Assembly (NCBI GenBank): GCA_033442325.1
Contig: JAWQFM010000002.1
Coordinates: 1,534,076-1,598,075 of the forward strand
Reading direction: 5' to 3'
DNA length: 64,000 nucleotides
From: Salpingoeca rosetta
Lineage: Eukaryota; Protista; Choanoflagellata
The position numbers and the translations under genes are program-made. The first letter of the stretch is position 1. Each line of letters begins with the position of its first letter. The notes below the pieces were generated by a model, which was not told the DNA's origin, searched no databases, and was given only the letters and a program-made list of their open reading frames with translations. Of this stretch, positions 7,060 to 16,931 are shown piece by piece.

Positions 7060-7904
7060 CACAGCAGCAGAGAGTGCGTGCAGGCAGCACGGCGTCACAG
7101 GCGCGCGCCATGCTGGGAATGGATCGCGGGTTTCGCATGGAGCAGTATCTCGCCAAGACTTGGGTATGTGCATCGTGCGATGTCCTCTGTGGTCCTCTGT
7201 GGTGATGTGTGGTCCTCTGTAGTCCTCTGTGGTCCTCTGTGGTGGTCTGTGGCGTGGAACACGAACAGCCGCTATGACACTGTGATGTGTTCAGCATCGA
7301 TCTGTACGCATGCATCTGCTTGTTACATCAAGAGTGCCTCAAGCCTCTGAATACATGCGATCACGTTTTCACACGCACACACACAGTGCCACATTCAAGC
7401 ACGCGTTTGACTCGCTGACGCTCACTTCCGTTCTGTCACTCCCTCCCTCTCCCTTCCATTCTGTCCCTGTCTCCTTGTCCCCCGGCCACATGCACACGCA
7501 GGTGCCCGACGATGAGCGGTCGACGTGCCTGGAGTGCAAGCAGTCGTTTTCGTTCTTCCGCCGCCGCCACCACTGCCGCGTGTGCGGTGAAGTTTTCTGT
7601 GGAGATTGCTCAAACTTTTACATCATGGACTACCGCGTGTGCGGGCCGTGCCAGCAGAAGGTGCTGGAGGCGCAGCGCACCTACCACTCGCTCATCACAG
7701 ACACGCCGTCCCACACGCCGCCACGCTCGCGCTCAACAACAACAACAACAGCACGGCAGCGGGGTTCCCGCCAGACCACCGCCAGCAACGTCACCCCACC
7801 ACGAGCAGCAGCGCCAGGGCAGCACGCGTCATCTGCTCCCCCGTCCTCATCGTCGCTTTCAGCCTCACTCTCTGCACGCCTGCAAGAGGCCCAATCACAG
7901 CAGC

Positions 7905-7935
<31 letters not shown>

Positions 7936-10900
7936 GCAACAACAGCAGCAGCAGCAACAACAGCAACAAGGGCAGCGGCGACGGGGAAGGGCACAGGGGC
8001 GAGCTGCTGGCACAGCTGAAGCGCGTGCACCAGCAGCAGCCACCATGACAGAAGAACAGCCACAGGCCACCTCGTCATCATCATCGTCGTCGTCGTCACA
8101 GCAAGAGGGGCAAGAGAGAAGTGGGCTTGGCCTGCTGGAAGGGAAGCTGTCTGCTCGCATTCGCAGCATGGAGGAGCGACCTGTCGATGCAAAGACGGCA
8201 GTGGAAACAGCGGCCGCAGTGGCCCGTGCACACCTGAATGAAGGCATTCATCGTGATGGTACCGGCAGTGCTGATACACCGTCTGCGTCCTCGTCGCTTC
8301 GCTCCTCACCAACGCCGTCATCATCGTCGTCGTCGTCATGGCTCTCGTGTTCCCTAGTCTCGTTCTTCGTCCTCTCGGTGGGTATCAGTGTATGAGTGTA
8401 TGGGTATGCGTGTGTGTACATGTGCGTGTGTGTGTGTGCATGTGTGCATGAGTGTATGTGTTTGTGCATGTGTTGTGTACTACATACGTTTGAGTGTCGC
8501 ATGCTGGTTGTGATGCTGTACGCGCATGTACACATTTGCAGTGGGGGTATGCGTGTCGCCTCCACCAGCCAACATGCTGACATCGTCCAACTCATGTCAA
8601 CCCAACTCTTCCTTCCGTTTCCGATGCCCCCCACTGTATCTTCCTTTCTTGCCTGCTTGTTAGGTTGGGGTGGTCGCTGGTGTTTTGTCTACCTACGCCA
8701 TCGACATGCCAGCACTTCCGTCCTCCCTGCCATCCCTGCCATCCCTTCCAACGCAGCAAGAAGCGCTGGACATGGCGTCCGAGACCGGACACGCTGTCCT
8801 CAATGCCGCGACCGCTTCTCGCGCATGGCAGTTCATGATGCAATATCCCTTGTACATTGCCGGCACCGCATGCGGGCTGGTGCTCCTGGGCGTGCTGAAC
8901 AGACGCCGCCTTGCTCTCCTTCGTCGCCAGGCCGTGGTCTACTATACATCCACCGTTGTCATCTCCCGCATCCTGCTGCTGAAATACTGGTCAAAGTACT
9001 TTCCAGTCTCCGAGGAAGTGGAGGAGGAGCAGTGGAACCGTCTCCACGAAGCAAACGCACGCCGCGTCCAGGTATGCTTGTGTGTTTGTGCGCGTGTGTT
9101 TGCGCGCGTGTGTTTGTGCGTTCTTGTGTTTGTGCATCAGCGTGTTTGCGTGTGTGTACATGCTCGTGCTGACGTGTTGTGATCCAACTGCGTGCGAATC
9201 CAAACACGTGCTTTCCAGTGGCTGCCTATCTTGCCGCTTTCTCACATCATCATGCTCTCCTCCTCCTCCTCCTCACCACCACCACCTCCTCCTCCTCCTC
9301 CTCACCACCACCACCACCACCACCACCACCACCACCATCAACCAGCTGCTGGCGCGGCGGCTGCGCGGGTTTTGGGTGAAGGTGGGGCAGTACCTGTCCT
9401 CACGCGGCGATGTGATGCCGGAGCCCTGGGTCCGCGAGCTTCGCTCCCTCCAGGTCTTGCAGATGCACACACGCGTGCATGCATGCATGCATGATGCTCG
9501 TGCGAGGTGGCAATGGAGGATTGATAGGTTTTTTTTTGAAGGGGGGGGGGAGGCGAGGGAGCGAGGGTGCAATTGTATGTATGCGTGTGTATGCGTGTGT
9601 ATGTGCATGCGGGTTCTTGATGTACCTGTCATGCGTGCGGATTCCACCTCCTCAACATTGGCTTCAACAGCACCTCGTTTGCATTTCGATCCTTTCATTC
9701 CCATCCGTCGTCACATCACCTCACACCCGTTTCCTTATCATGCCAACACCTCACCCTGCCTCCCCCCTATTCCTGTTTCAACCACCTTCCACCTCTCTTC
9801 CTCTCTTCGACTGCAGGACACGATGCCGTTCCAGCCGTTTGCGGACGTGAAAGCGATTGTGGAGGAGGATCTTGGCCACCCGCTCACAGAGCTCTTCTCC
9901 TCGTTTGAAGAACTCCCAATTGCATCAGCAAGTATCGCGCAGGTGCACATTGCCACACTCAAGCGCAGCAAGCACCAGGTGCGTGCATTTGCCTGCGTAT
10001 GCGTGCGCGTGTGTGTGCCATCGTTGAGGCTTGTGTAGCTGCAGGTGGCTCTGATGAAGGCATGTATCATGTGTTCCTGTCACTCTGTTTCGTTGATGTC
10101 GTGGAGGAGGGGGGGGGGTGTTCAACGCTCATCCACACGTCCACACATCCACACCTGTGTCCTGTCGTGCAGGTGGTGGTGAAAGTGCAGCACAAAAACA
10201 TTGACCGCATCATGAAGCAGGACCTCAAGAATCTCTTTGTCATCGTCTCATGGTGTGGTGCTGTGCGATACTGTGTGTGTCTAAGTGTGCGTATCTGTGT
10301 GTGTCTCTCTGTGTGTGTGTGTGTCCGTGTGTGTGTGTGTGTGTCTGTGTGTTTGTGCGTGTGTGTGTGTGATTACTTGTCACCCTTTTCGACTTGACCC
10401 TTCGGTCTCATCGACCTTCTTCCCCCTCCCCAACCCGAACAAACAGGGTGGCGTATCTTGAGCCGCAGTATGATTTTCGGCCTGTGCTGGAGGAGTGGGC
10501 CAAGGTCGCCATCAAGGAGCTCGACTTCAAACACGAGGCCGCAAACATGCAGCGTGTGCGCAACAATCTCCTCAAAACGCATTTAGATGTCATTGTGCCC
10601 AAACTGGAGGAGGGCCTCTTCTCCAACCGCGTGATTGTGATGGAGTACTGCGAGGGCTTCAAGGTGACGGACACGGATCTTCTTGACGCGCACGACATTG
10701 ACCGCGAATCGCTCATGCGTCGCATCTGCCAAGCATATGCGCACCAAGTGTATGTTGACGGCTTCTTCAACTGCGATCCGCATCCAGGTATGGTCGCCGG
10801 TGCTGTACTGCTGGTCCTGACGGAGGTGTCGTGTGGTATGCAGCGAACACGGCGCTCTTCTGCGTTTTGCACAACGTTGTTTCGTTCGTTGTGCTTGGTT

Positions 10901-13900
10901 GATTGCTGTCGTGCGTGCGCGCGTGCTCGGGTGTTTACACGCGTGTATCCTGTTGTCTATACCAGTTGGTCAGACCTCACTCCTTCATCTCACTCCTCAG
11001 TATCACTCCTTCACCTCACTCCTTCACCTTACTCCTCAACCTCATTCCTTCACCTCACTCCTTACATTCGTTCCCCCTCCCCCTACTTCCCTTAACACAT
11101 TCACCCCTACCATATCTCGTCGCCCACATTCAACGTGCTTGCAGGCAACATCCTGGTCCAGGTGCGCGACGGCAAGGCGTACCCGGTGCTGCTTGACTAC
11201 GGCATGTGCCGGCAGCTGCCCGAGGAGAAGAAGCGGGCCTTTGCCGCCATGATCTACGCAGCGACCACCATGGACTTTGGCACGCTGCTGTGGAGTTTTG
11301 ACGAGATGGGCCTGAAACTGAAGCGGGACGACCCGTTTGAGGACATGAAGAACATTCGCTTTGTGCTGCGTGACACAGCGCCTGGCGCAGAGATGCGCAG
11401 AGACTTCAAGAAGTTTCGCGAGGACGTGTGGCAGAAGCGCCAGCAGCTGCCGCGCAGCCAGCGAAACCCGGTCGAGGCGTGGCCGCCGGAGCTGCTGTTC
11501 TTCTTCCGCGTGACCCTGCTTCTGCGTGGCCTGTGCGCTGTGCTTGGCGTGCGCATGCGCTACTCGCTCGTGCTGGCCCCATACGCCCACCTCGCCCTCA
11601 TCCGATCCTACAACCGCTCCCTGCACGCCACGCACGCCGTCACCGCTGCGCCCATCCACACCGACACCAGTCAAGACACAACCGCCACGAACACCACCAC
11701 CGCAGGCGGTGTGCCACCATCATCGCCACCGCCGTCGGCGCCACTGTCGCGCGTGCGGCTGGTGCGCATGGCTGCCAGTCCGCAGCGAGCGGTGATGGAG
11801 GTGCTGCAGGAGCTGTACAGCGAGGGCCTCATCACAGGCATCCAGGTTGCCGCCTACCACCAAGGACAGTGCGTCGTGAACGCATGTGCGGGGACAATGG
11901 GAGCGGCGGACCCGCGGGCCGTCACGCCGAGCACGCTCTTCAACTGCTTCTCCGTGATGAAGGGCGTGACGGCGACGGCGCTGCACGTGCTCGCCGACCA
12001 GCGGCTTCTGCAGTACAGCGATCGCGTTGGTGCACACTGGCCCGAGTACGCGTGCAACGGCAAGGAGGAGACGACCATCTACAACGTGCTTACCCACTCT
12101 GCTGGGCTGCACCGCTTCCCCGGCCTCAAGCTGAACCTGAAGCAGGTGTGCGACTGGCACACGATGCAGAAGCACATACAGGAGGCGGCAGCAGAGACAC
12201 CACCAGGCACGCTCGCCCGCTACCACATCCTGTCGTTTGGGTGGATTGTTGCCGGCATCATTGAGCGGGTGACGCGCGGGCAGCCGTTCAGCGAATTCCT
12301 TCGTCAGCGCATCGCTGCTCCGCTCGGCATTGAGGTGTGTGGTGGTGGACAGGTGGAGAGAGAAGTTGGTCGGGGCTGCGAGTGTGTGGTTGCAATCGGC
12401 GTGTACGTGTGTGTGCATGACTGTGTTGCAACCACAGCGTGTGCTTGTTTTGGGTTGTCTGTATGTATTGCATTGGGTAAACCACGCGTGTGGCGGGAAG
12501 ATGTTGACACGTGTGTGTGTGTGTTTGATATCGCGCGTCTTGCACTCATCTGCGTGCCTGACCCTCATCTGCGTGTGCTGCTGTGCACTGGTGATGGTTG
12601 TGCCAGGACGAGTTTATGATTGGCGTCGACATGGATGATGAGCGCATCTGCGACCGACTCGCCACACTCTGCAACGGGTGCGACTGTTTTTGCTGTTATT
12701 TGCATGGGATACAGTCGTGTGTTGTGTTGCAGTCTTTGGGGATGGTGCACAGGTTTTGGTGTCGGGTTGCTGGTTCCCATTGCGGCTCCTCGTCTTTCCC
12801 ACGCCGTACCTAACAACATGTCTCGCACATCACCACCACCACCACCACGATCACGACGATCAACTGCCACGATCACCTCCACGACACCACGACACCACCT
12901 CCATGTTCACAACACCACGACTACCAACAACAGGTTCTTTGCGACGGAGGATGGCGAGCCACCGAGCGAGGAGGACGTGAAGCGGCTGCTGGCACAGCTG
13001 CGGCGCGCCGACCTGCCACAGCAGCGCCACGAGACGCCAGGGGCGGGCGATGTCGTGCTGGTGAACGGAACAACAAGGAGCGGGCGGCGTGTGCCCACCG
13101 TTGCGCACGTGAGTGGTGAAGACGCAGAAGACGCACAAGAGGTAGAGGAGGAGGGTGCTGGTGATGCTGAAGGCGCGGCAGGAGGGGAGAAGCATGAGGA
13201 CGAAGCAGAAGAACAGCGCGACGGCGATGAGGATGAGGATGAGGATGAGGATGAGGAGGAAGAGGATGAGGAGGAGGATGAGGAGGAAGAGGACACGAGT
13301 GCTGTTGCAGCATCGGTACCACGCCACCCAGATGCGTGGCCGCCTGTTCTCAACCAGCAGCCGCACCGCTACGACGCGCTTGTGGAGAAGACGCGTACGG
13401 AGGTGATGAAGGAAATGGACAGCACAACAGACGGATGGGGCCTTGTCAAGACGTCATCAGACGTTGAGATCTGGAAGAAAAAGGTGGGTTACAATGTGTG
13501 TGTGTGTGTGTGTGTGTGCGTGTGTGTGTGTGTGTGGCAATGTGTGTGTGGCAATGTGTGTGTGTGTGGGGGGGGGGGCAATGCGTGTGTGTGTGTGTCA
13601 ATGTGAATGTGTGTGCGAGTGAGTCTCATGGACACGGTTCATTGTCGACACTCGATCCCTCATTCTTCCCGCCCTCATCCTGCAATGTTCCCATTGTCAC
13701 ACCTGTCTTTAGATCCAGGACAGCCCGTTGGTGATGGTTCGGGGCGTGGGCGTGATTGAGCGCCACCCAGCCGTTCTCTTCAAGATTCTGACGCAGGTGG
13801 ACCAGAAGCCGCTGTGGAACAAGGACTTTGCCTGCCTGGACGAGGTTGAAGTGTTTGATGACTGCACAAAGGTTCGTGTTGCGTCTGCATACGTGTATTT

Positions 13901-14335
13901 TGCGTATGTGAGCTGGTGTGGAAGAATGTGTGTTTGTATATGAATCTGTGAATGTATTGTGGATGTGTTGTGCAGGTGTGCAGCATGCCTCTGCACGGGC
14001 TGACGCGAGACTGCGATGCGTGTGGTGTGCTTCAGGTGATCCGTGATGAGTACAAGCCCATCTGGCCGGTCTCTGGGCGCGACATGTGCTTCGTGCAGTC
14101 CCTTCGTCTCCTGGACAACGGCGGCTTCTTCATGGTCAGCAAGAGCGTCGAGCACCCAGACTGCCCGCCCAAATCGGGGTGAGTCGTGCGAGAGGCGGTG
14201 TGGTGTGGAACATATGTGGAACATGTGTGTTTTGGTGTGTGTGCGTGTGCCGTGCCGTTATGCACGCATGTGTGGTTGAGGAGAGGCTCGTCAACAATAT
14301 GTGGTGATCTTACCACTTTCCTTGCGCACTCCCCT

Positions 14336-14391
<56 letters not shown>

Positions 14392-15038
14392 CTCACACAC
14401 TCTCTCATGCGCGTGTGGAAACCCAACATGTCTGTCAGTGTTGTGCGAGCGGAGGGTTTGGGTGGCATGCGCGTTGTGCCCTTCCCCAACGATCCCAACA
14501 AGTGCACCGTCACATACCTCACTGCTGTCGACCCAAAGGTGTGTGTCGGGTGTGTGTGCATTGTACGTGTTTTCATGTTTTGTGTGTGTGTGTGTGTTTT
14601 GCTTAGTGTGTGTGTTTGTGCGTGTTTGTGCGTGTGCGTGTGTGTGTTTGTGCGTGTGTGTGTTTGTGCGTGTGTGTGTTTGTGCGTTGTGTTTGTTAGT
14701 TTGATTTCAAGTTGCATTTGGATTTTGATACTTTAATCACATCAGGCACCTATCTTCCTCACTTTCCCCCACAATACCATCCTTGTCCCTCCCACGCACA
14801 CATGCAAACACAACTTGGCAGGGCAATGTTCCGACGATGGTGGTCAACGTCGTTGCGACCAACCAGCCGCTGTGTGTGGCGGCGATTCGCAAGCTTGCCA
14901 TGTCGCGCCCACAGTACACGCCGCCGCCAGAGCCAACCCCGCCACCAACTCCACAGCAGAAGAAGAGAGCACCACGCAAGCAGGGAAGCAAGCAGGCACT
15001 GAAGAAGACGAAAGCCAGGAAGCAGCAGACGACGGGGA

Positions 15039-15069
<31 letters not shown>

Positions 15070-15402
15070 GAAGGCGCAGAAGAGAGGTGCCGTGAAAGAA
15101 GCTAGTAACCACGCAGCAGCAGCAGCAGCACGCACACGATCAGGGAATGAGCAAGCATCAGCTGTGCCTGCTGCCACTACACATCAACAGCAACAAGCAG
15201 AACAACCAGAAGACGAGGAATTGGACGCCAGCAAGATGATTCTGCTGGACCCGTGCATGTACAACACACGACAGGTGGGTTGGCGTTAGCGTTGGCGTTG
15301 GCGTTGGCGCACTGACACGCGAGACGCCTGCATCTGCATTACACTTGCTCATGCACGAAATGACACAATTGATCCGACCGCCATTGCAAGCTGCTTGATG
15401 TT

Positions 15403-15475
<73 letters not shown>

Positions 15476-15713
15476 CAGTTGCGGCAAGCGGTGATCCCCT
15501 CAGCCAACGGCCACTTCTCTGCGCGTGCGCTTGCCAAGTTCTACGCCGTGCTCGCCAACAACGGCCGACTTGGGTCGTTTCAACTGCTGCAGCCAGAGAC
15601 TGTTGCCACCATGTCAAAGGTTCGCTTGCTTATTGTGTGCATGGAACTCCTGCACGGTACAGAAATGGTGGCGTTGTTGTATCCACCACCCTGTCGGCCT
15701 TACACACGTGCTT

Positions 15714-15779
<66 letters not shown>

Positions 15780-16379
15780 CTGTAAATGAATGAGTGCGAA
15801 TGTGATCGGTGTGTGTGCGTGCGTGTGTGTGTGTGTGAAAATCAGAGTGTCTCACGACGCATTCCTGATGCTTTTTTTGTGTTTCGATTCCCTGAACAGA
15901 CGCAGCCCATTGAGACGCCGTTCATGCAAGGCATGCGCGTGCGCTGGGGTCTTGGCTACCAAAAGTACAGGTACGTGTATGTATATGTGTGTGTGTATGA
16001 TTGTACGTCTTTGGCTTTGTTACTGTTGCGTTTGTTTTGTTGCTGTGTTCATCCTGTGGTTGACCTGCTTCCTTCCTTTTGTTCCCCTTCCATTTGCGCT
16101 TGTCGCGACTTTATCTGCGCCACCTCACACCACCCCTCCTCCCTTCTCTACAACGCTGCAATCCCTCATCTTCTCCACAGGATGAAGCGGGACGGGCGTG
16201 TGTTGGACACGCCGTTTGGCCACGTCGGGCTTGGCGGCAGTGCAGCGTTTTGCGATCCACACACCAACACGTCCTTTGCCATTACCGTGAATCGTTTGCA
16301 GCTGGATAAGGAGGTTGCCGAGCGTGTCCTTGACGCCATCACGGATGCGTTGCAGATTGGCCAAGTCGACCTCATGTGA
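5955..16379 (+). CDS. Multidomain protein: SCP2 - FYVE - TM - ABC1/UbiB (ADCK/ABC1K) kinase - beta-lactamase-fold serine hydrolase split by a START domain; 20 exons, ~1,877 aa
   Basis: Exons: 5955-6097, 6252-6355, 6636-6745, 6939-7163, 7502-8377, 8664-9071, 9346-9453, 9817-9978, 10173-10252, 10447-10787, 11145-12334, 12607-12677, 12934-13483, 13713-13871, 14036-14178, 14439-14538, 14822-15274, 15479-15619, 15900-15970, 16181-16379. All introns are GT-AG with compatible phases and the total is 5,634 nt. Domain motifs are given in the sub-features. Confidence 0.85.
6030..6990 (+). other. SCP2 (sterol carrier protein 2)-like lipid-binding domain
   Basis: [14 protein letters not shown]...[37 protein letters not shown] fits the SCP2 consensus (W.iD...pD.ti......f..l..Gkl....A....klki.G). 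Confidence 0.75.
7155..7665 (+). other. FYVE zinc finger (PI3P-binding)
   Basis: W|VPD (WxxD), [26 protein letters not shown]. All three FYVE signature motifs and eight Cys are present. Confidence 0.95.
9030..11600 (+). other. ABC1/UbiB/ADCK atypical protein kinase-like domain
   Basis: KVGQ (KxGQ), LQD, A-rich loop [46 protein letters not shown]. Confidence 0.95.
11780..12677 (+). other. Beta-lactamase-related serine hydrolase (class C / family VIII esterase fold), N-terminal part
   Basis: [23 protein letters not shown] (SxxK at 11951-11962), [33 protein letters not shown] (catalytic Tyr ~12221), IAAPLGI. Lies in the same exon as the end of the kinase. Confidence 0.92.
13370..14900 (+). other. 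START (StAR-related lipid transfer) domain
   Basis: [88 protein letters not shown]: a complete START consensus. Confidence 0.93.
15240..16379 (+). other. Beta-lactamase-related serine hydrolase, C-terminal part
   Basis: [54 protein letters not shown]...FAITVN. Confidence 0.9.
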
Positions 16380-16931
16380 TGTGTGCGTATGTTGTGTGTA
16401 TGTCGTGTGTGTGTGTGTGTCGTGTGTGTGCATGTGAGTGTGGTGTGTGCATGTGTGTACGTGTGTGTTGTGCGTGGCATGTGTGTGTTGTGCGTGCACG
16501 TGAGTGTGCGTGGCATGAAGTGTGGGCGTGCACACCAACCTGTGTTCCTCATCTCTCATTCGTAGATTCGATGCACATTTAGAGCACCCGTTTTCAAAAG
16601 TTTGCTGTGTTGCATTGCCAATAAAACAACATCAAATTCATCTTGCCAATTTTTTATTTGCCAACGCGCACAGTCCGCGCTTTCTGACCACGCTGCCACA
16701 CAACCACACACAACAACTCGACGACGACCGCATGCACTGGCCGCTGCATCCCCCTCCACAACAAGCAGCACATTCGCTCACTCAACCGGTCTCTCGACGA
16801 GCCGGAGACAGCAACGGCTGCAACAGCTACAACAGCTGCAGTATCTGCAGCAACATCCTGAGCGGCAAAAGCGCCATTTCCCAAGGCGCAGACACAAGCC
16901 ACAAGCAAAACCTGTGACGGCCAAGGCATTC

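What the first reader, a model, noticed from the sequence alone, without database searches (positions are those of the whole stretch)
11780..16379. START domain inserted inside the beta-lactamase fold
Seen: the hydrolase SxxK and Tyr motifs lie before 12334 and the IPSANG..SARALA and FGHxGxGG motifs lie after 15479. Between them are ~470 aa containing a whole START domain. Established: this interval is a variable, omega-loop-like region near the active site in class C beta-lactamase/family VIII esterases. Inference: a nested insertion placing a lipid-binding pocket next to the catalytic serine, allowing substrate channelling or ligand gating. Split HMM hits would hide this in routine annotation.
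Basis: partly seen in the sequence, partly recalled or inferred. Interest (0 to 1): 0.85.

Follow-up and report, generated by a model that had tools for sequence, protein, structure and literature searches.

The report
START domain nested inside serine hydrolase
A choanoflagellate gene really does encode a lipid-binding START domain spliced into an active-site loop of a beta-lactamase-fold esterase, on one expressed mRNA. The arrangement is shared by other choanoflagellates and appears undescribed, but what it does is untested.

Summary
On the + strand, ten GT-AG exons (..12334 to 16379) encode the C-terminal part of an FYVE–ABC1/UbiB kinase–PF00144 hydrolase (SCP2 seen only in relatives). The SxxK and Tyr motifs lie before 12334. 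The IPSANG and FGHVGLGG motifs lie after 15479. In between is a 456-aa insert: a conserved helix, an acidic linker, a ~200-aa START domain and a basic/poly-Q linker.

Stranded RNA-seq reads or RNA contigs support every splice junction. No START-skipping joint was seen. Two single exons each carry both hydrolase and START sequence.

Five choanoflagellate relatives (S. infusionum, Choanoeca flexa, Didymoeca costata, Savillea parva, one metagenomic) form one clade with the window on an insert-free tree. Corallochytrium, Chromosphaera, algal and plant homologues have only a 40–120-aa loop there. A second metagenomic relative encodes N-half, PDZ, two STARTs and the start of the C-half in one uninterrupted ORF.

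AlphaFold models of two orthologues reassemble the halves into a complete family VIII carboxylesterase fold (Z 45.8 to 7Y3Z). START sits on disordered linkers, and pTM is about 0.7.

The loop corresponds by position to the R1/Ω-like wall of the substrate site. Lipid presentation or gating is plausible but unproven.

This is a new variant of a known kind. Interest is moderate to high.

The parts
11780..12334 (+). Hydrolase (PF00144) N-terminal half, in the last part of a long exon that also encodes the end of the ABC1 kinase domain. Nucleophile motif S-V-M-K is at 11951-11962 and the catalytic Tyr at 12221-12223.
   Evidence: Pfam Beta-lactamase E 1.1e-38, profile positions 6-178. Motif coordinates. 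The donor at 12334 is joined to 12607 by 16+5 stranded reads and two contigs.
12607..12677 (+). Small exon ([23 protein letters not shown]) that ends the N-half of the hydrolase fold.
   Evidence: Collinear tblastn hit to P0001 residues 1111-1135. Both junctions have RNA-seq support. It aligns with the RIATL element present in all homologues.
12934..13363 (+). Conserved loop helix ([13 protein letters not shown], also present in START-less Corallochytrium) followed by a 143-aa acidic, low-complexity linker (net charge -39).
   Evidence: Alignment and linker composition. The equivalent segment is predicted disordered in the orthologue models.
13364..14899 (+). START domain of about 200 aa. Coding pieces: 13364-13483, 13713-13871, 14036-14178, 14439-14538, 14822-14899.
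   Evidence: Pfam START on exon 14036-14178. 42-45% identity over 200 aa to the START domains of P0001 and P0158 (Pfam E 4e-20 and 3e-20). All internal junctions are seen in reads or contigs.
14900..15238 (+). Basic, Pro- and poly-Q-rich linker of 113 aa (net charge +12), in the same exon as the START C-terminal helix and the restart of the hydrolase.
   Evidence: Open frame 14822-15274. Composition. RNA depth 13-50 across the exon.
15239..16379 (+). Hydrolase C-terminal half. Coding pieces: 15239-15274 ([12 protein letters not shown]), 15479-15619 (IPSANG at 15491-15508), 15900-15970, and 16181-16379 (FGHVGLGG at 16215-16238; stop codon at 16377-16379).
   Evidence: Pfam Beta-lactamase profile positions 280-319 in the last exon. 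tblastn to P0001 residues 1512-1645. RNA contigs X4 record 4 and X6 record 7 span exons 15083-15274 through 16391. Joint 15619/15900 has 15+12 reads.
7496..10795 (+). Upstream context of the same gene: FYVE finger (7496-7711) and ABC1/UbiB kinase exons (9811-9981, 10448-10795).
   Evidence: Pfam FYVE 57.1 bits; ABC1 58.8 and 96.8 bits. Collinear with P0001.

Best explanation
This is the 3' part of one expressed gene of a craspedid choanoflagellate. The encoded protein has a FYVE finger, an ABC1/UbiB atypical kinase and a C-terminal serine hydrolase. Orthologues also carry an N-terminal SCP2 domain.

The hydrolase belongs to the beta-lactamase/PBP fold and is closest to family VIII carboxylesterases. 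Its surface loop between the Tyr motif and the P-x-A-N-G element is 40-60 aa long in most START-less homologues. That loop corresponds by position to the R1 (omega-like) wall of the substrate site. In this gene it has received a complete START lipid-binding domain flanked by long disordered linkers.

Shown here:
- The insertion is real and is included in the RNA sampled, with no skipping joint seen.
- It arose once before the choanoflagellates sampled here diverged.
- START is under purifying selection, while the linkers are not.
- The catalytic Ser, Lys, Tyr and H-x-G are kept.
- The two hydrolase halves are predicted to refold into one intact domain.

Inferred: the hydrolase is active, and START, anchored at the mouth of the active site, binds a membrane lipid. 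It then either presents that lipid (an ester or amide) to the catalytic serine, or opens and closes access to the site according to lipid occupancy. The site of action would be PI3P-positive endosomes or phagosomes, to which the FYVE finger would target the protein.
For: Gene model and expression:
- The spliced CDS is in frame.
- Every GT-AG junction is supported by stranded RNA-seq reads or RNA contigs, depth is similar over START and hydrolase exons, and no START-skipping joint was reported.
- Exons 12934-13483 and 14822-15274 each carry both hydrolase-loop and START sequence.

Conservation:
- Orthologues have the same nested order: S. infusionum, D. costata, C. flexa, S. parva and two metagenomic proteins.
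- In metagenomic locus L001, the N-half, PDZ, two STARTs and the start of the C-half lie in one uninterrupted reading frame.
- Five of these six orthologues (P0159 was left off the tree) and the window form one clade on an insert-free tree (SH-aLRT 91; one gain).
- Identity to the window is 28-45% in START against 4-33% in the linkers.
- S-x-x-K, Tyr and IPSANG are kept in all five orthologues checked. H-x-G is visible in the alignment in all complete ones.

Structure:
- AF2 gives pLDDT 82-86. The hydrolase halves score above 90 and START scores about 67-96 by 10-residue block.
- Model residues 1-715 align to carboxylesterase 7Y3Z at Z 45.8, rmsd 2.4 A, with 350 of 377 residues aligned.
- pTM of 0.71 and 0.69 is higher than my rough estimate of about 0.53 for a freely placed START. 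This hints at a predicted interface (my inference).
- R1 borders the S1 site and controls substrate access in family VIII esterases (PMC9795927).
Against: - No enzymatic or lipid-binding data exist.
- The linkers are 57-143 aa long, predicted disordered and unconserved. START therefore need not sit at the active site.
- I could not read model coordinates or PAE, so the START pocket-to-serine geometry is unknown. The pTM argument is indirect.
- AF2 was run on orthologues (52-61% and about 46% identical over the hydrolase), not on the window's own protein.
- The MSA has only six START-bearing rows.
- A related lineage has also put a PDZ and a second START into the same loop. That fits a merely permissive loop as well as it fits a functional one.
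- Minor skipped isoforms below the reporting thresholds are not excluded.
Confidence: 0.5

Rival explanations
1. START is an independent passenger module. The R1-like loop is simply a permissive surface site. START works on its own, on flexible tethers, as a membrane-contact, lipid-sensing or lipid-transfer module of a multi-domain lipid protein (SCP2, FYVE, UbiB, hydrolase). It has no direct coupling to the catalytic centre.
For: - The flanking linkers are long, low-complexity, unconserved and predicted disordered.
- The same loop has also accepted a PDZ and a second START in a metagenomic lineage.
- Brown-algal homologues have 115-119-aa low-complexity expansions at the same place.
- The window's opposite-charge linkers are not conserved in relatives.
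Against: - The nested position has been kept in all six relatives found, from both groups on the tree, rather than START moving to a terminus.
- pTM of about 0.7 in two orthologues suggests a predicted packing of the two domains (indirect).
- The loop lines the substrate site in solved relatives.
Confidence: 0.38
2. The hydrolase domain is a non-catalytic scaffold (pseudoenzyme). The split fold serves only as a structural frame that displays START.
For: Nothing direct. The domain lacks the Y-x-N Asn and the K-T-G box of true class C beta-lactamases.
Against: - S-x-x-K, the Tyr and H-x-G are near-invariant across 87 homologues with and without START, and IPSANG is strongly conserved.
- H-x-G or W-x-G in place of K-T-G is normal for this branch (own knowledge; W-x-G is noted in PMC9795927).
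- The best sequence and fold matches are active carboxylesterases.
Confidence: 0.07
3. The finding is an artefact. The START exons would be skipped, belong to a separate nested transcript, or reflect a wrong gene model or a misassembly.
For: - One contig-only joint, 13164 to 14012 (TG..AC, side 20, run X4 only).
- RNA contigs break at the acidic and poly-Q repeats.
Against: - All canonical junctions are supported in two raw stranded RNA runs and two contig sets.
- Strand and depth are uniform across the exons.
- No reported joint (those seen in at least 3 reads or in a contig) skips from hydrolase to hydrolase.
- Two exons are chimeric for START and hydrolase sequence.
- Transcriptome-derived complete ORFs in four other species have the same domain order.
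- Locus L001 encodes the arrangement in a single ORF.
Confidence: 0.03

Closest known systems
ABC1/UbiB kinase-beta-lactamase-fold fusion proteins without an insert (Corallochytrium Clim_evm12s47, Chromosphaera perkinsii Nk52_evm2s2367, Chattonella, brown algae, Riccia, Closterium)
   Same: - They share the ABC1 + PF00144 backbone, often with FYVE and sometimes SCP2.
- They share the catalytic motifs and the flanking RIATL and LDP-x-FN...IP-x-ANG elements.
- They are 31-49% identical to the window over the hydrolase N-half.
   Different: Their loop at the insertion point is only 40-120 aa long and contains no domain. The window and its choanoflagellate relatives have 336-690 aa there, containing START.
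Bacterial family VIII carboxylesterases (FEH 7Y3Z, 5GMX, EstZF172 8J5V, Caulobacter 5GKV, EstA 3ZYT, EH7 7PP3, EstB 1CI8)
   Same: - Same fold: Z 35-46, rmsd 2.2-3.0 A over about 340-350 residues.
- Best sequence matches in the PDB (E 3e-36 to 4e-24 for the first five listed; EstB 3e-8; EH7 not among the rows shown).
- Ser-Lys-Tyr catalytic set.
- The R1 region borders the substrate site.
   Different: They are single-domain, soluble bacterial enzymes. The 33 residues 221-253 of 5GMX are replaced in the orthologue P0001 by 376 residues that include START. The window's substrate is unknown.
ACOT11/BFIT (STARD14) and ACOT12 (STARD15): thioesterase + START
   Same: A lipid-metabolising hydrolase is covalently joined to a START domain. 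The ACOT11 START domain is a weak PDB hit (3FO5, E 0.008). That START modulates the thioesterase in those proteins is my own knowledge and was not tested here.
   Different: Their hydrolase is a hotdog-fold thioesterase and START is appended in tandem at the C-terminus. It is not nested in an active-site loop.
START domains of STARD10, CERT, PCTP and STARD5, and bacterial START 3QSZ
   Same: These are the best START sequence matches in the PDB (E 2e-8 to 1.5e-5) and the nearest ESM Atlas clusters (score 0.95). The predicted secondary-structure order matches the helix-grip topology.
   Different: The similarity is too low to assign a subfamily or a ligand. None of these domains is inserted inside another domain.

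Membership tests
Beta-lactamase/PBP-fold serine hydrolases (Pfam PF00144), family VIII carboxylesterase-like branch | N-terminal S-x-x-K nucleophile motif | tested here: met
   S-V-M-K at 11951-11962. The Ser and Lys columns are at least 90% conserved in 87 homologues.
Beta-lactamase/PBP-fold serine hydrolases (Pfam PF00144), family VIII carboxylesterase-like branch | Catalytic Tyr (general base) in the helical subdomain | tested here: met
   Tyr of YHILSFGW at 12221-12223. The column is near-invariant.
Beta-lactamase/PBP-fold serine hydrolases (Pfam PF00144), family VIII carboxylesterase-like branch | Third box on the edge beta-strand (K-T-G, H-x-G or W-x-G) | tested here: met
   H-V-G within FGHVGLGG at 16215-16238. 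The Gly columns are near-invariant.
Beta-lactamase/PBP-fold serine hydrolases (Pfam PF00144), family VIII carboxylesterase-like branch | Complete two-subdomain fold formed by the sequence | tested here: met
   Tested on orthologues, not on the window's own chain. The AF2 model of P0001:927-1648 aligns to 7Y3Z_A at Z 45.8, rmsd 2.4 A, 350/377 residues, spanning model residues 1-715. The C. flexa model shows the same secondary-structure elements.
Beta-lactamase/PBP-fold serine hydrolases (Pfam PF00144), family VIII carboxylesterase-like branch | Esterase/amidase activity | not testable with these tools
   Needs expression and assay.
Class C (AmpC) beta-lactamase sensu stricto | Y-x-N and K-T-G motifs | tested here: not met
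   The window has Y-H-I and H-V-G. AmpC chains match the orthologue's hydrolase-START region at only E 1e-7 to 6e-6, against 3e-36 for carboxylesterases. The AmpC motif definitions come from my own knowledge.
START domain (Pfam PF01852) | Significant match to the START profile | tested here: met
   Window exon 14036-14178 scores 23.6 bits (cut-off 22, E 3.9e-5). Orthologues score 60-149 bits. The window's START is 42-45% identical to those of P0001 and P0158 over 200 aa.
START domain (Pfam PF01852) | Helix-grip fold (N-terminal helix, nine-stranded sheet, long C-terminal helix) | tested here: met
   Tested on orthologue models only. The DSSP order is H289-306, three strands, two helices, six strands, then H467-490, with pLDDT mostly 75-95. 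No separate fold search of the START part was run.
START domain (Pfam PF01852) | Binds a lipid in the internal cavity | not testable with these tools
   Needs lipid-binding assays.
ABC1/UbiB atypical kinase (Pfam PF03109) in the same protein | Match to the ABC1 profile upstream in the same gene | tested here: met
   Window exons 9811-9981 (58.8 bits) and 10448-10795 (96.8 bits). They are collinear with P0001.
ACOT11/12-type thioesterase-START proteins | Hotdog-fold thioesterase domains followed by a C-terminal START | tested here: not met
   The hydrolase here is PF00144 and START is internal to it. The resemblance is one of logic only.

The most novel reading that the evidence does not exclude
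START acts as a built-in lipid extractor and lid for the hydrolase. It pulls a specific ester or amide lipid out of a PI3P-positive endosomal or phagosomal membrane and hands it directly to the catalytic serine, or unblocks the site only when loaded. This would make a single-chain 'extract-and-hydrolyse' machine, created by grafting a lipid-transfer domain onto the substrate-gating loop of a family VIII esterase. Natural PDZ + 2xSTART variants of the same loop would then be further elaborations.
Probability: 0.3. Interest if true: 0.8.

Novelty: new variant of a known kind. Interest (0 to 1): 0.6.

Why it matters
- Covalent hydrolase-START pairs are known only in tandem form (ACOT11/12, from my own knowledge). 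Here a lipid-transfer domain sits inside the loop that walls the substrate site of a serine hydrolase.
- Nature supplies the controls. Close START-less homologues exist (Corallochytrium, Chromosphaera), and one lineage carries PDZ plus two STARTs in the same loop.
- This makes a testable case for how domain insertion can create lipid-gated or lipid-fed catalysis.
- It also adds a lineage-specific lipid-handling protein to choanoflagellates, the closest living relatives of animals (own knowledge).
- It bears on the poorly understood UbiB-kinase/beta-lactamase-fold fusions found in algae, plants and protists.
- If START proves to be an uncoupled passenger, the finding is only an architectural curiosity.

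Tried and rejected
1. I tried to retrieve the window's own annotated protein for folding. Three word-index searches and the exhaustive search returned relatives only, so AF2 was run on orthologues.
2. A START-only search (P0001:1205-1425) found nothing. The START subfamily is therefore unresolved beyond weak PDB and Atlas neighbours.
3. I tested whether the window's acidic (-39) and basic (+12) linkers are a conserved electrostatic clasp. Relatives' linkers are all mildly acidic or neutral, so I rejected this.
4. I considered an alternative donor, GTGAGT at about 13108, that could skip START. No read supports it.
5. The joint 13164 to 14012 (TG..AC, one contig, 20-nt side), the 'goes back 30' joint at 15279-15308 and the 14250/12510 joint are repeat or microsatellite artefacts.
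6. Four literature searches for this architecture, covering ABC1/UbiB, beta-lactamase, START, FYVE, SCP2, ABC1K11, Salpingoeca and Monosiga, found nothing relevant. Two broader searches gave only the family VIII structure papers.
7. I could not map the insertion residue by residue onto AmpC or EH7, because no tool gave those pairwise alignments. The R1/omega assignment rests on the 5GMX alignment, on the ends of the AmpC alignment (query 192 ~ AmpC 188) and on offsets from the catalytic Tyr.

Full report
**What is in the sequence**

The + strand from about 7500 to 16379 carries one multi-exon eukaryotic gene.
- Its introns are rich in (GT)n/(CA)n microsatellites.
- Landmark peptides and splice signals gave a ten-exon model for the 3' part: ..-12334, 12607-12677, 12934-13483, 13713-13871, 14036-14178, 14439-14538, 14822-15274, 15479-15619, 15900-15970, 16181-16379.
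- All junctions are GT-AG. The joined CDS is in frame with a single terminal stop.
- Pfam places Beta-lactamase (PF00144) profile positions 6-178 in the exon ending at 12334 (E 1e-38) and positions 280-319 in the last exon. START profile positions 99-141 fall in exon 14036-14178.
- Upstream exons carry a FYVE finger and the ABC1/UbiB kinase domain.

- S-V-M-K (11951-11962) and the Tyr (12221) lie before 12334.
- IPSANG (15491-15508) and FGHVGLGG (16215-16238) lie after 15479.

**Is it one transcript?**

Two raw, stranded RNA-seq runs and two sets of RNA contigs of the same organism were laid on 11700-16500.
- Every predicted junction is seen, with 5-20 reads per run for those listed in the joint table.
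- Junctions 13483/13713, 15274/15479 and 15970/16181 lie next to repeats. They are seen as contiguous pieces of contigs (X6 records 6 and 7, X4 record 4).
- All exons are read from the same strand. Depth over the START exons is similar to that over the hydrolase exons, and introns are near zero.
- No joint links the hydrolase N-half directly to the C-half.
- Exon 12934-13483 encodes a loop helix of the hydrolase, a linker and the first START elements. Exon 14822-15274 encodes the START C-terminal helix, a linker and the restart of the hydrolase ([12 protein letters not shown]). Both ends of the insert are therefore fixed inside single exons.
- The few odd joints are at microsatellites or low-complexity repeats and have no canonical ends.

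The skipped-exon or nested-transcript reading is thus largely refuted. Rare isoforms below the reporting thresholds cannot be excluded.

**Relatives**

An exhaustive HMMER search with the 400-aa exon product gave Salpingoeca infusionum P0001 as best hit (1648 aa, 61% identity). It is a complete ORF from a transcriptome.
- Pfam on P0001 gives SCP2, FYVE, ABC1, Beta-lactamase in two stretches, and START at 1224-1402. The alignment places START between the two hydrolase halves.
- tblastn shows the window is collinear with P0001 exon by exon.
- The same nested order occurs in Didymoeca costata, Choanoeca flexa, Savillea parva and two metagenomic proteins.
- Homologues from Corallochytrium, Chromosphaera, Chattonella, brown algae, Rhodosorus, Riccia and Closterium have the ABC1 + hydrolase backbone but no START.

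In a MAFFT alignment, the segment between RIATL.. and ..LDP-x-FN is much longer in the START bearers.

| Group | Segment length |
|---|---|
| Most START-less proteins | 40-60 aa |
| JGI protein P0066 | 87 aa |
| Brown algae | 115-119 aa |
| Window | 456 aa |
| START-bearing relatives | 336-690 aa |

A maximum-likelihood tree built with the inserts removed puts the window and five START-bearing relatives on one side of a branch (P0159 was left off; SH-aLRT 91; one gain). Corallochytrium plus one unnamed protein is the sister group, and the window is next to S. infusionum.

Across these species, identity to the window differs by region.

| Region | Identity to the window |
|---|---|
| Hydrolase halves | 43-56% |
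| START | 28-45% |
| Linkers | 4-33% |

The catalytic Ser, Lys, Tyr and the IPSANG element are retained in all five orthologues checked. The H-x-G box is visible in the alignment in all complete ones.

**Independent genomic proof**

The metagenomic relative P0159 lies on a 20.8-kb contig.
- A single uninterrupted frame (L001 2944-6912) encodes the end of ABC1, the hydrolase N-half, a PDZ domain, two START copies and the start of the hydrolase C-half.
- The last 47 aa follow in a separate exon.
- In that genome, nesting therefore does not depend on any splice model. The same loop has accepted further domains.

**Do the halves assemble?**

I could not hand in the window's own spliced protein, so AF2 was run on the hydrolase-START regions of two orthologues with an 87-row alignment.

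| Orthologue region | Mean pLDDT | pTM | Disordered linker segments (pLDDT under 50) |
|---|---|---|---|
| S. infusionum P0001:927-1648 | 82.4 | 0.71 | 242-274, 501-564 |
| C. flexa P0158:230-922 | 86.0 | 0.69 | 253-274, 506-538 |

- In the S. infusionum model the hydrolase halves score above 90. START scores about 67-96 by 10-residue block and shows helix-grip secondary-structure order.
- VIA-align places model residues 1-715 on carboxylesterase FEH (7Y3Z_A) with Z 45.8, rmsd 2.4 A and 350 of 377 residues aligned. 5GMX, 8J5V, 5GKV, 3ZYT, EH7 and EstB follow.
- The two halves therefore form one complete family VIII-type fold in silico.
- pTM is higher than my rough estimate of about 0.53 for a START placed at random relative to the hydrolase. 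This hints that AF2 predicts a defined packing. The estimate is indirect, and I could not read coordinates or PAE.

**Where is the insert in the fold?**

- By sequence, the orthologue's N-half aligns to 5GMX residues 24-220 and its C-half to residues 254-368. The insert therefore replaces 5GMX 221-253.
- AmpC chains align up to about residue 188, just before the omega loop (189-226 in AmpC numbering, from my own knowledge).
- In EH7 the R1 region (Phe230-Gly275, after Tyr192) forms one wall of the S1 substrate site. Its length governs access to that site (PMC9795927).
- Counting from the catalytic Tyr, the insertion falls in this R1-equivalent stretch.

**Mechanism**

Shown:
- The insertion is nested, expressed, conserved and selectively maintained.
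- The catalytic set is intact.

Inferred:
- The hydrolase is active.
- START, anchored at the R1 wall, binds a lipid and presents it to the catalytic serine or gates the site.
- The FYVE finger (57 bits) suggests PI3P-positive endosomes or phagosomes as the place of action.
- The SCP2 of orthologues and the UbiB domain fit a lipid-handling role. The known functions of these families are from my own knowledge.

The main rival is that START is an uncoupled passenger on long flexible tethers in a permissive loop.
- In favour of the rival: the linkers are disordered and unconserved, the same loop holds PDZ and two STARTs in one lineage, and it holds low-complexity expansions in brown algae.
- I put coupling at about 0.5 and the passenger model at about 0.38.

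**Comparison with what is known, and novelty**

- The domain is not a class C beta-lactamase sensu stricto, because it has no Y-x-N Asn and no K-T-G. It belongs to the family VIII carboxylesterase-like branch of PF00144.
- START is generic. Its nearest sequence neighbours are a bacterial START, STARD10, CERT and STARD5, all with weak scores. PCTP and STARD5 clusters are nearest in the ESM Atlas.
- The nearest functional analogy is ACOT11/12 (thioesterase + START). These use a different hydrolase fold and are tandem, not nested.
- Four literature searches for the architecture found no description of it. The orthologues are unnamed transcriptome ORFs.
- I rate it a new variant of a known kind. 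It is real and well supported as an architecture, and open as to mechanism.

An earlier scan note on the same stretch (s1-438634) listed the same domain set. I confirmed FYVE, ABC1, the hydrolase and START here. I saw SCP2 only in orthologues, and I did not test the transmembrane segment.

Noticed in passing
L001:2944-7238 (metagenome contig ERZ1764460 k141_8407378): A choanoflagellate-like relative (closest to Didymoeca) carries a PDZ domain and two tandem START domains in the same hydrolase loop. All of this lies in one uninterrupted ORF. A second metagenomic protein (P0161) has PDZ + START there.
   Followed up: partly
window:15279-15308: An intronic GTTGGC-type minisatellite draws very high RNA depth (contig depth up to about 2500) with loose ends leading into unrelated sequence. 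It also shows an A>G difference at 15288. The reads probably come from other expressed loci that share the repeat.
   Followed up: no
window:13487-13600, 14330-14390, 14560-14700, 15400-15475, 15715-15840: Most of the introns read in this gene (at least five of the nine in the 3' part) hold a long (GT)n or (CA)n microsatellite. These caused read cross-mapping, for example the 14250/12510 joint with ATGTGTG between its two sides.
   Followed up: no
window:12934-13363 and 14900-15238: In the window alone, the linker before START is strongly acidic (net -39, with a D/E run) and the one after it is basic and poly-Q (net +12). Relatives lack this charge opposition.
   Followed up: yes
window:16602-21860: A downstream + strand ORF of more than 1750 aa is extremely D/E-, K- and S-rich. 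It ends in an SNF2-type helicase start (..[22 protein letters not shown]) before an intron. It is probably an ATRX/RAD54-like remodeller.
   Followed up: no
window:13189-13192: G>C differences appear in about a quarter to a half of RNA reads inside the GAG/GAT-rich acidic repeat. They may be allelic or repeat mis-mapping.
   Followed up: no
SCP2 is supported only in the orthologues P0001, P0160 and P0011.
   Followed up: partly
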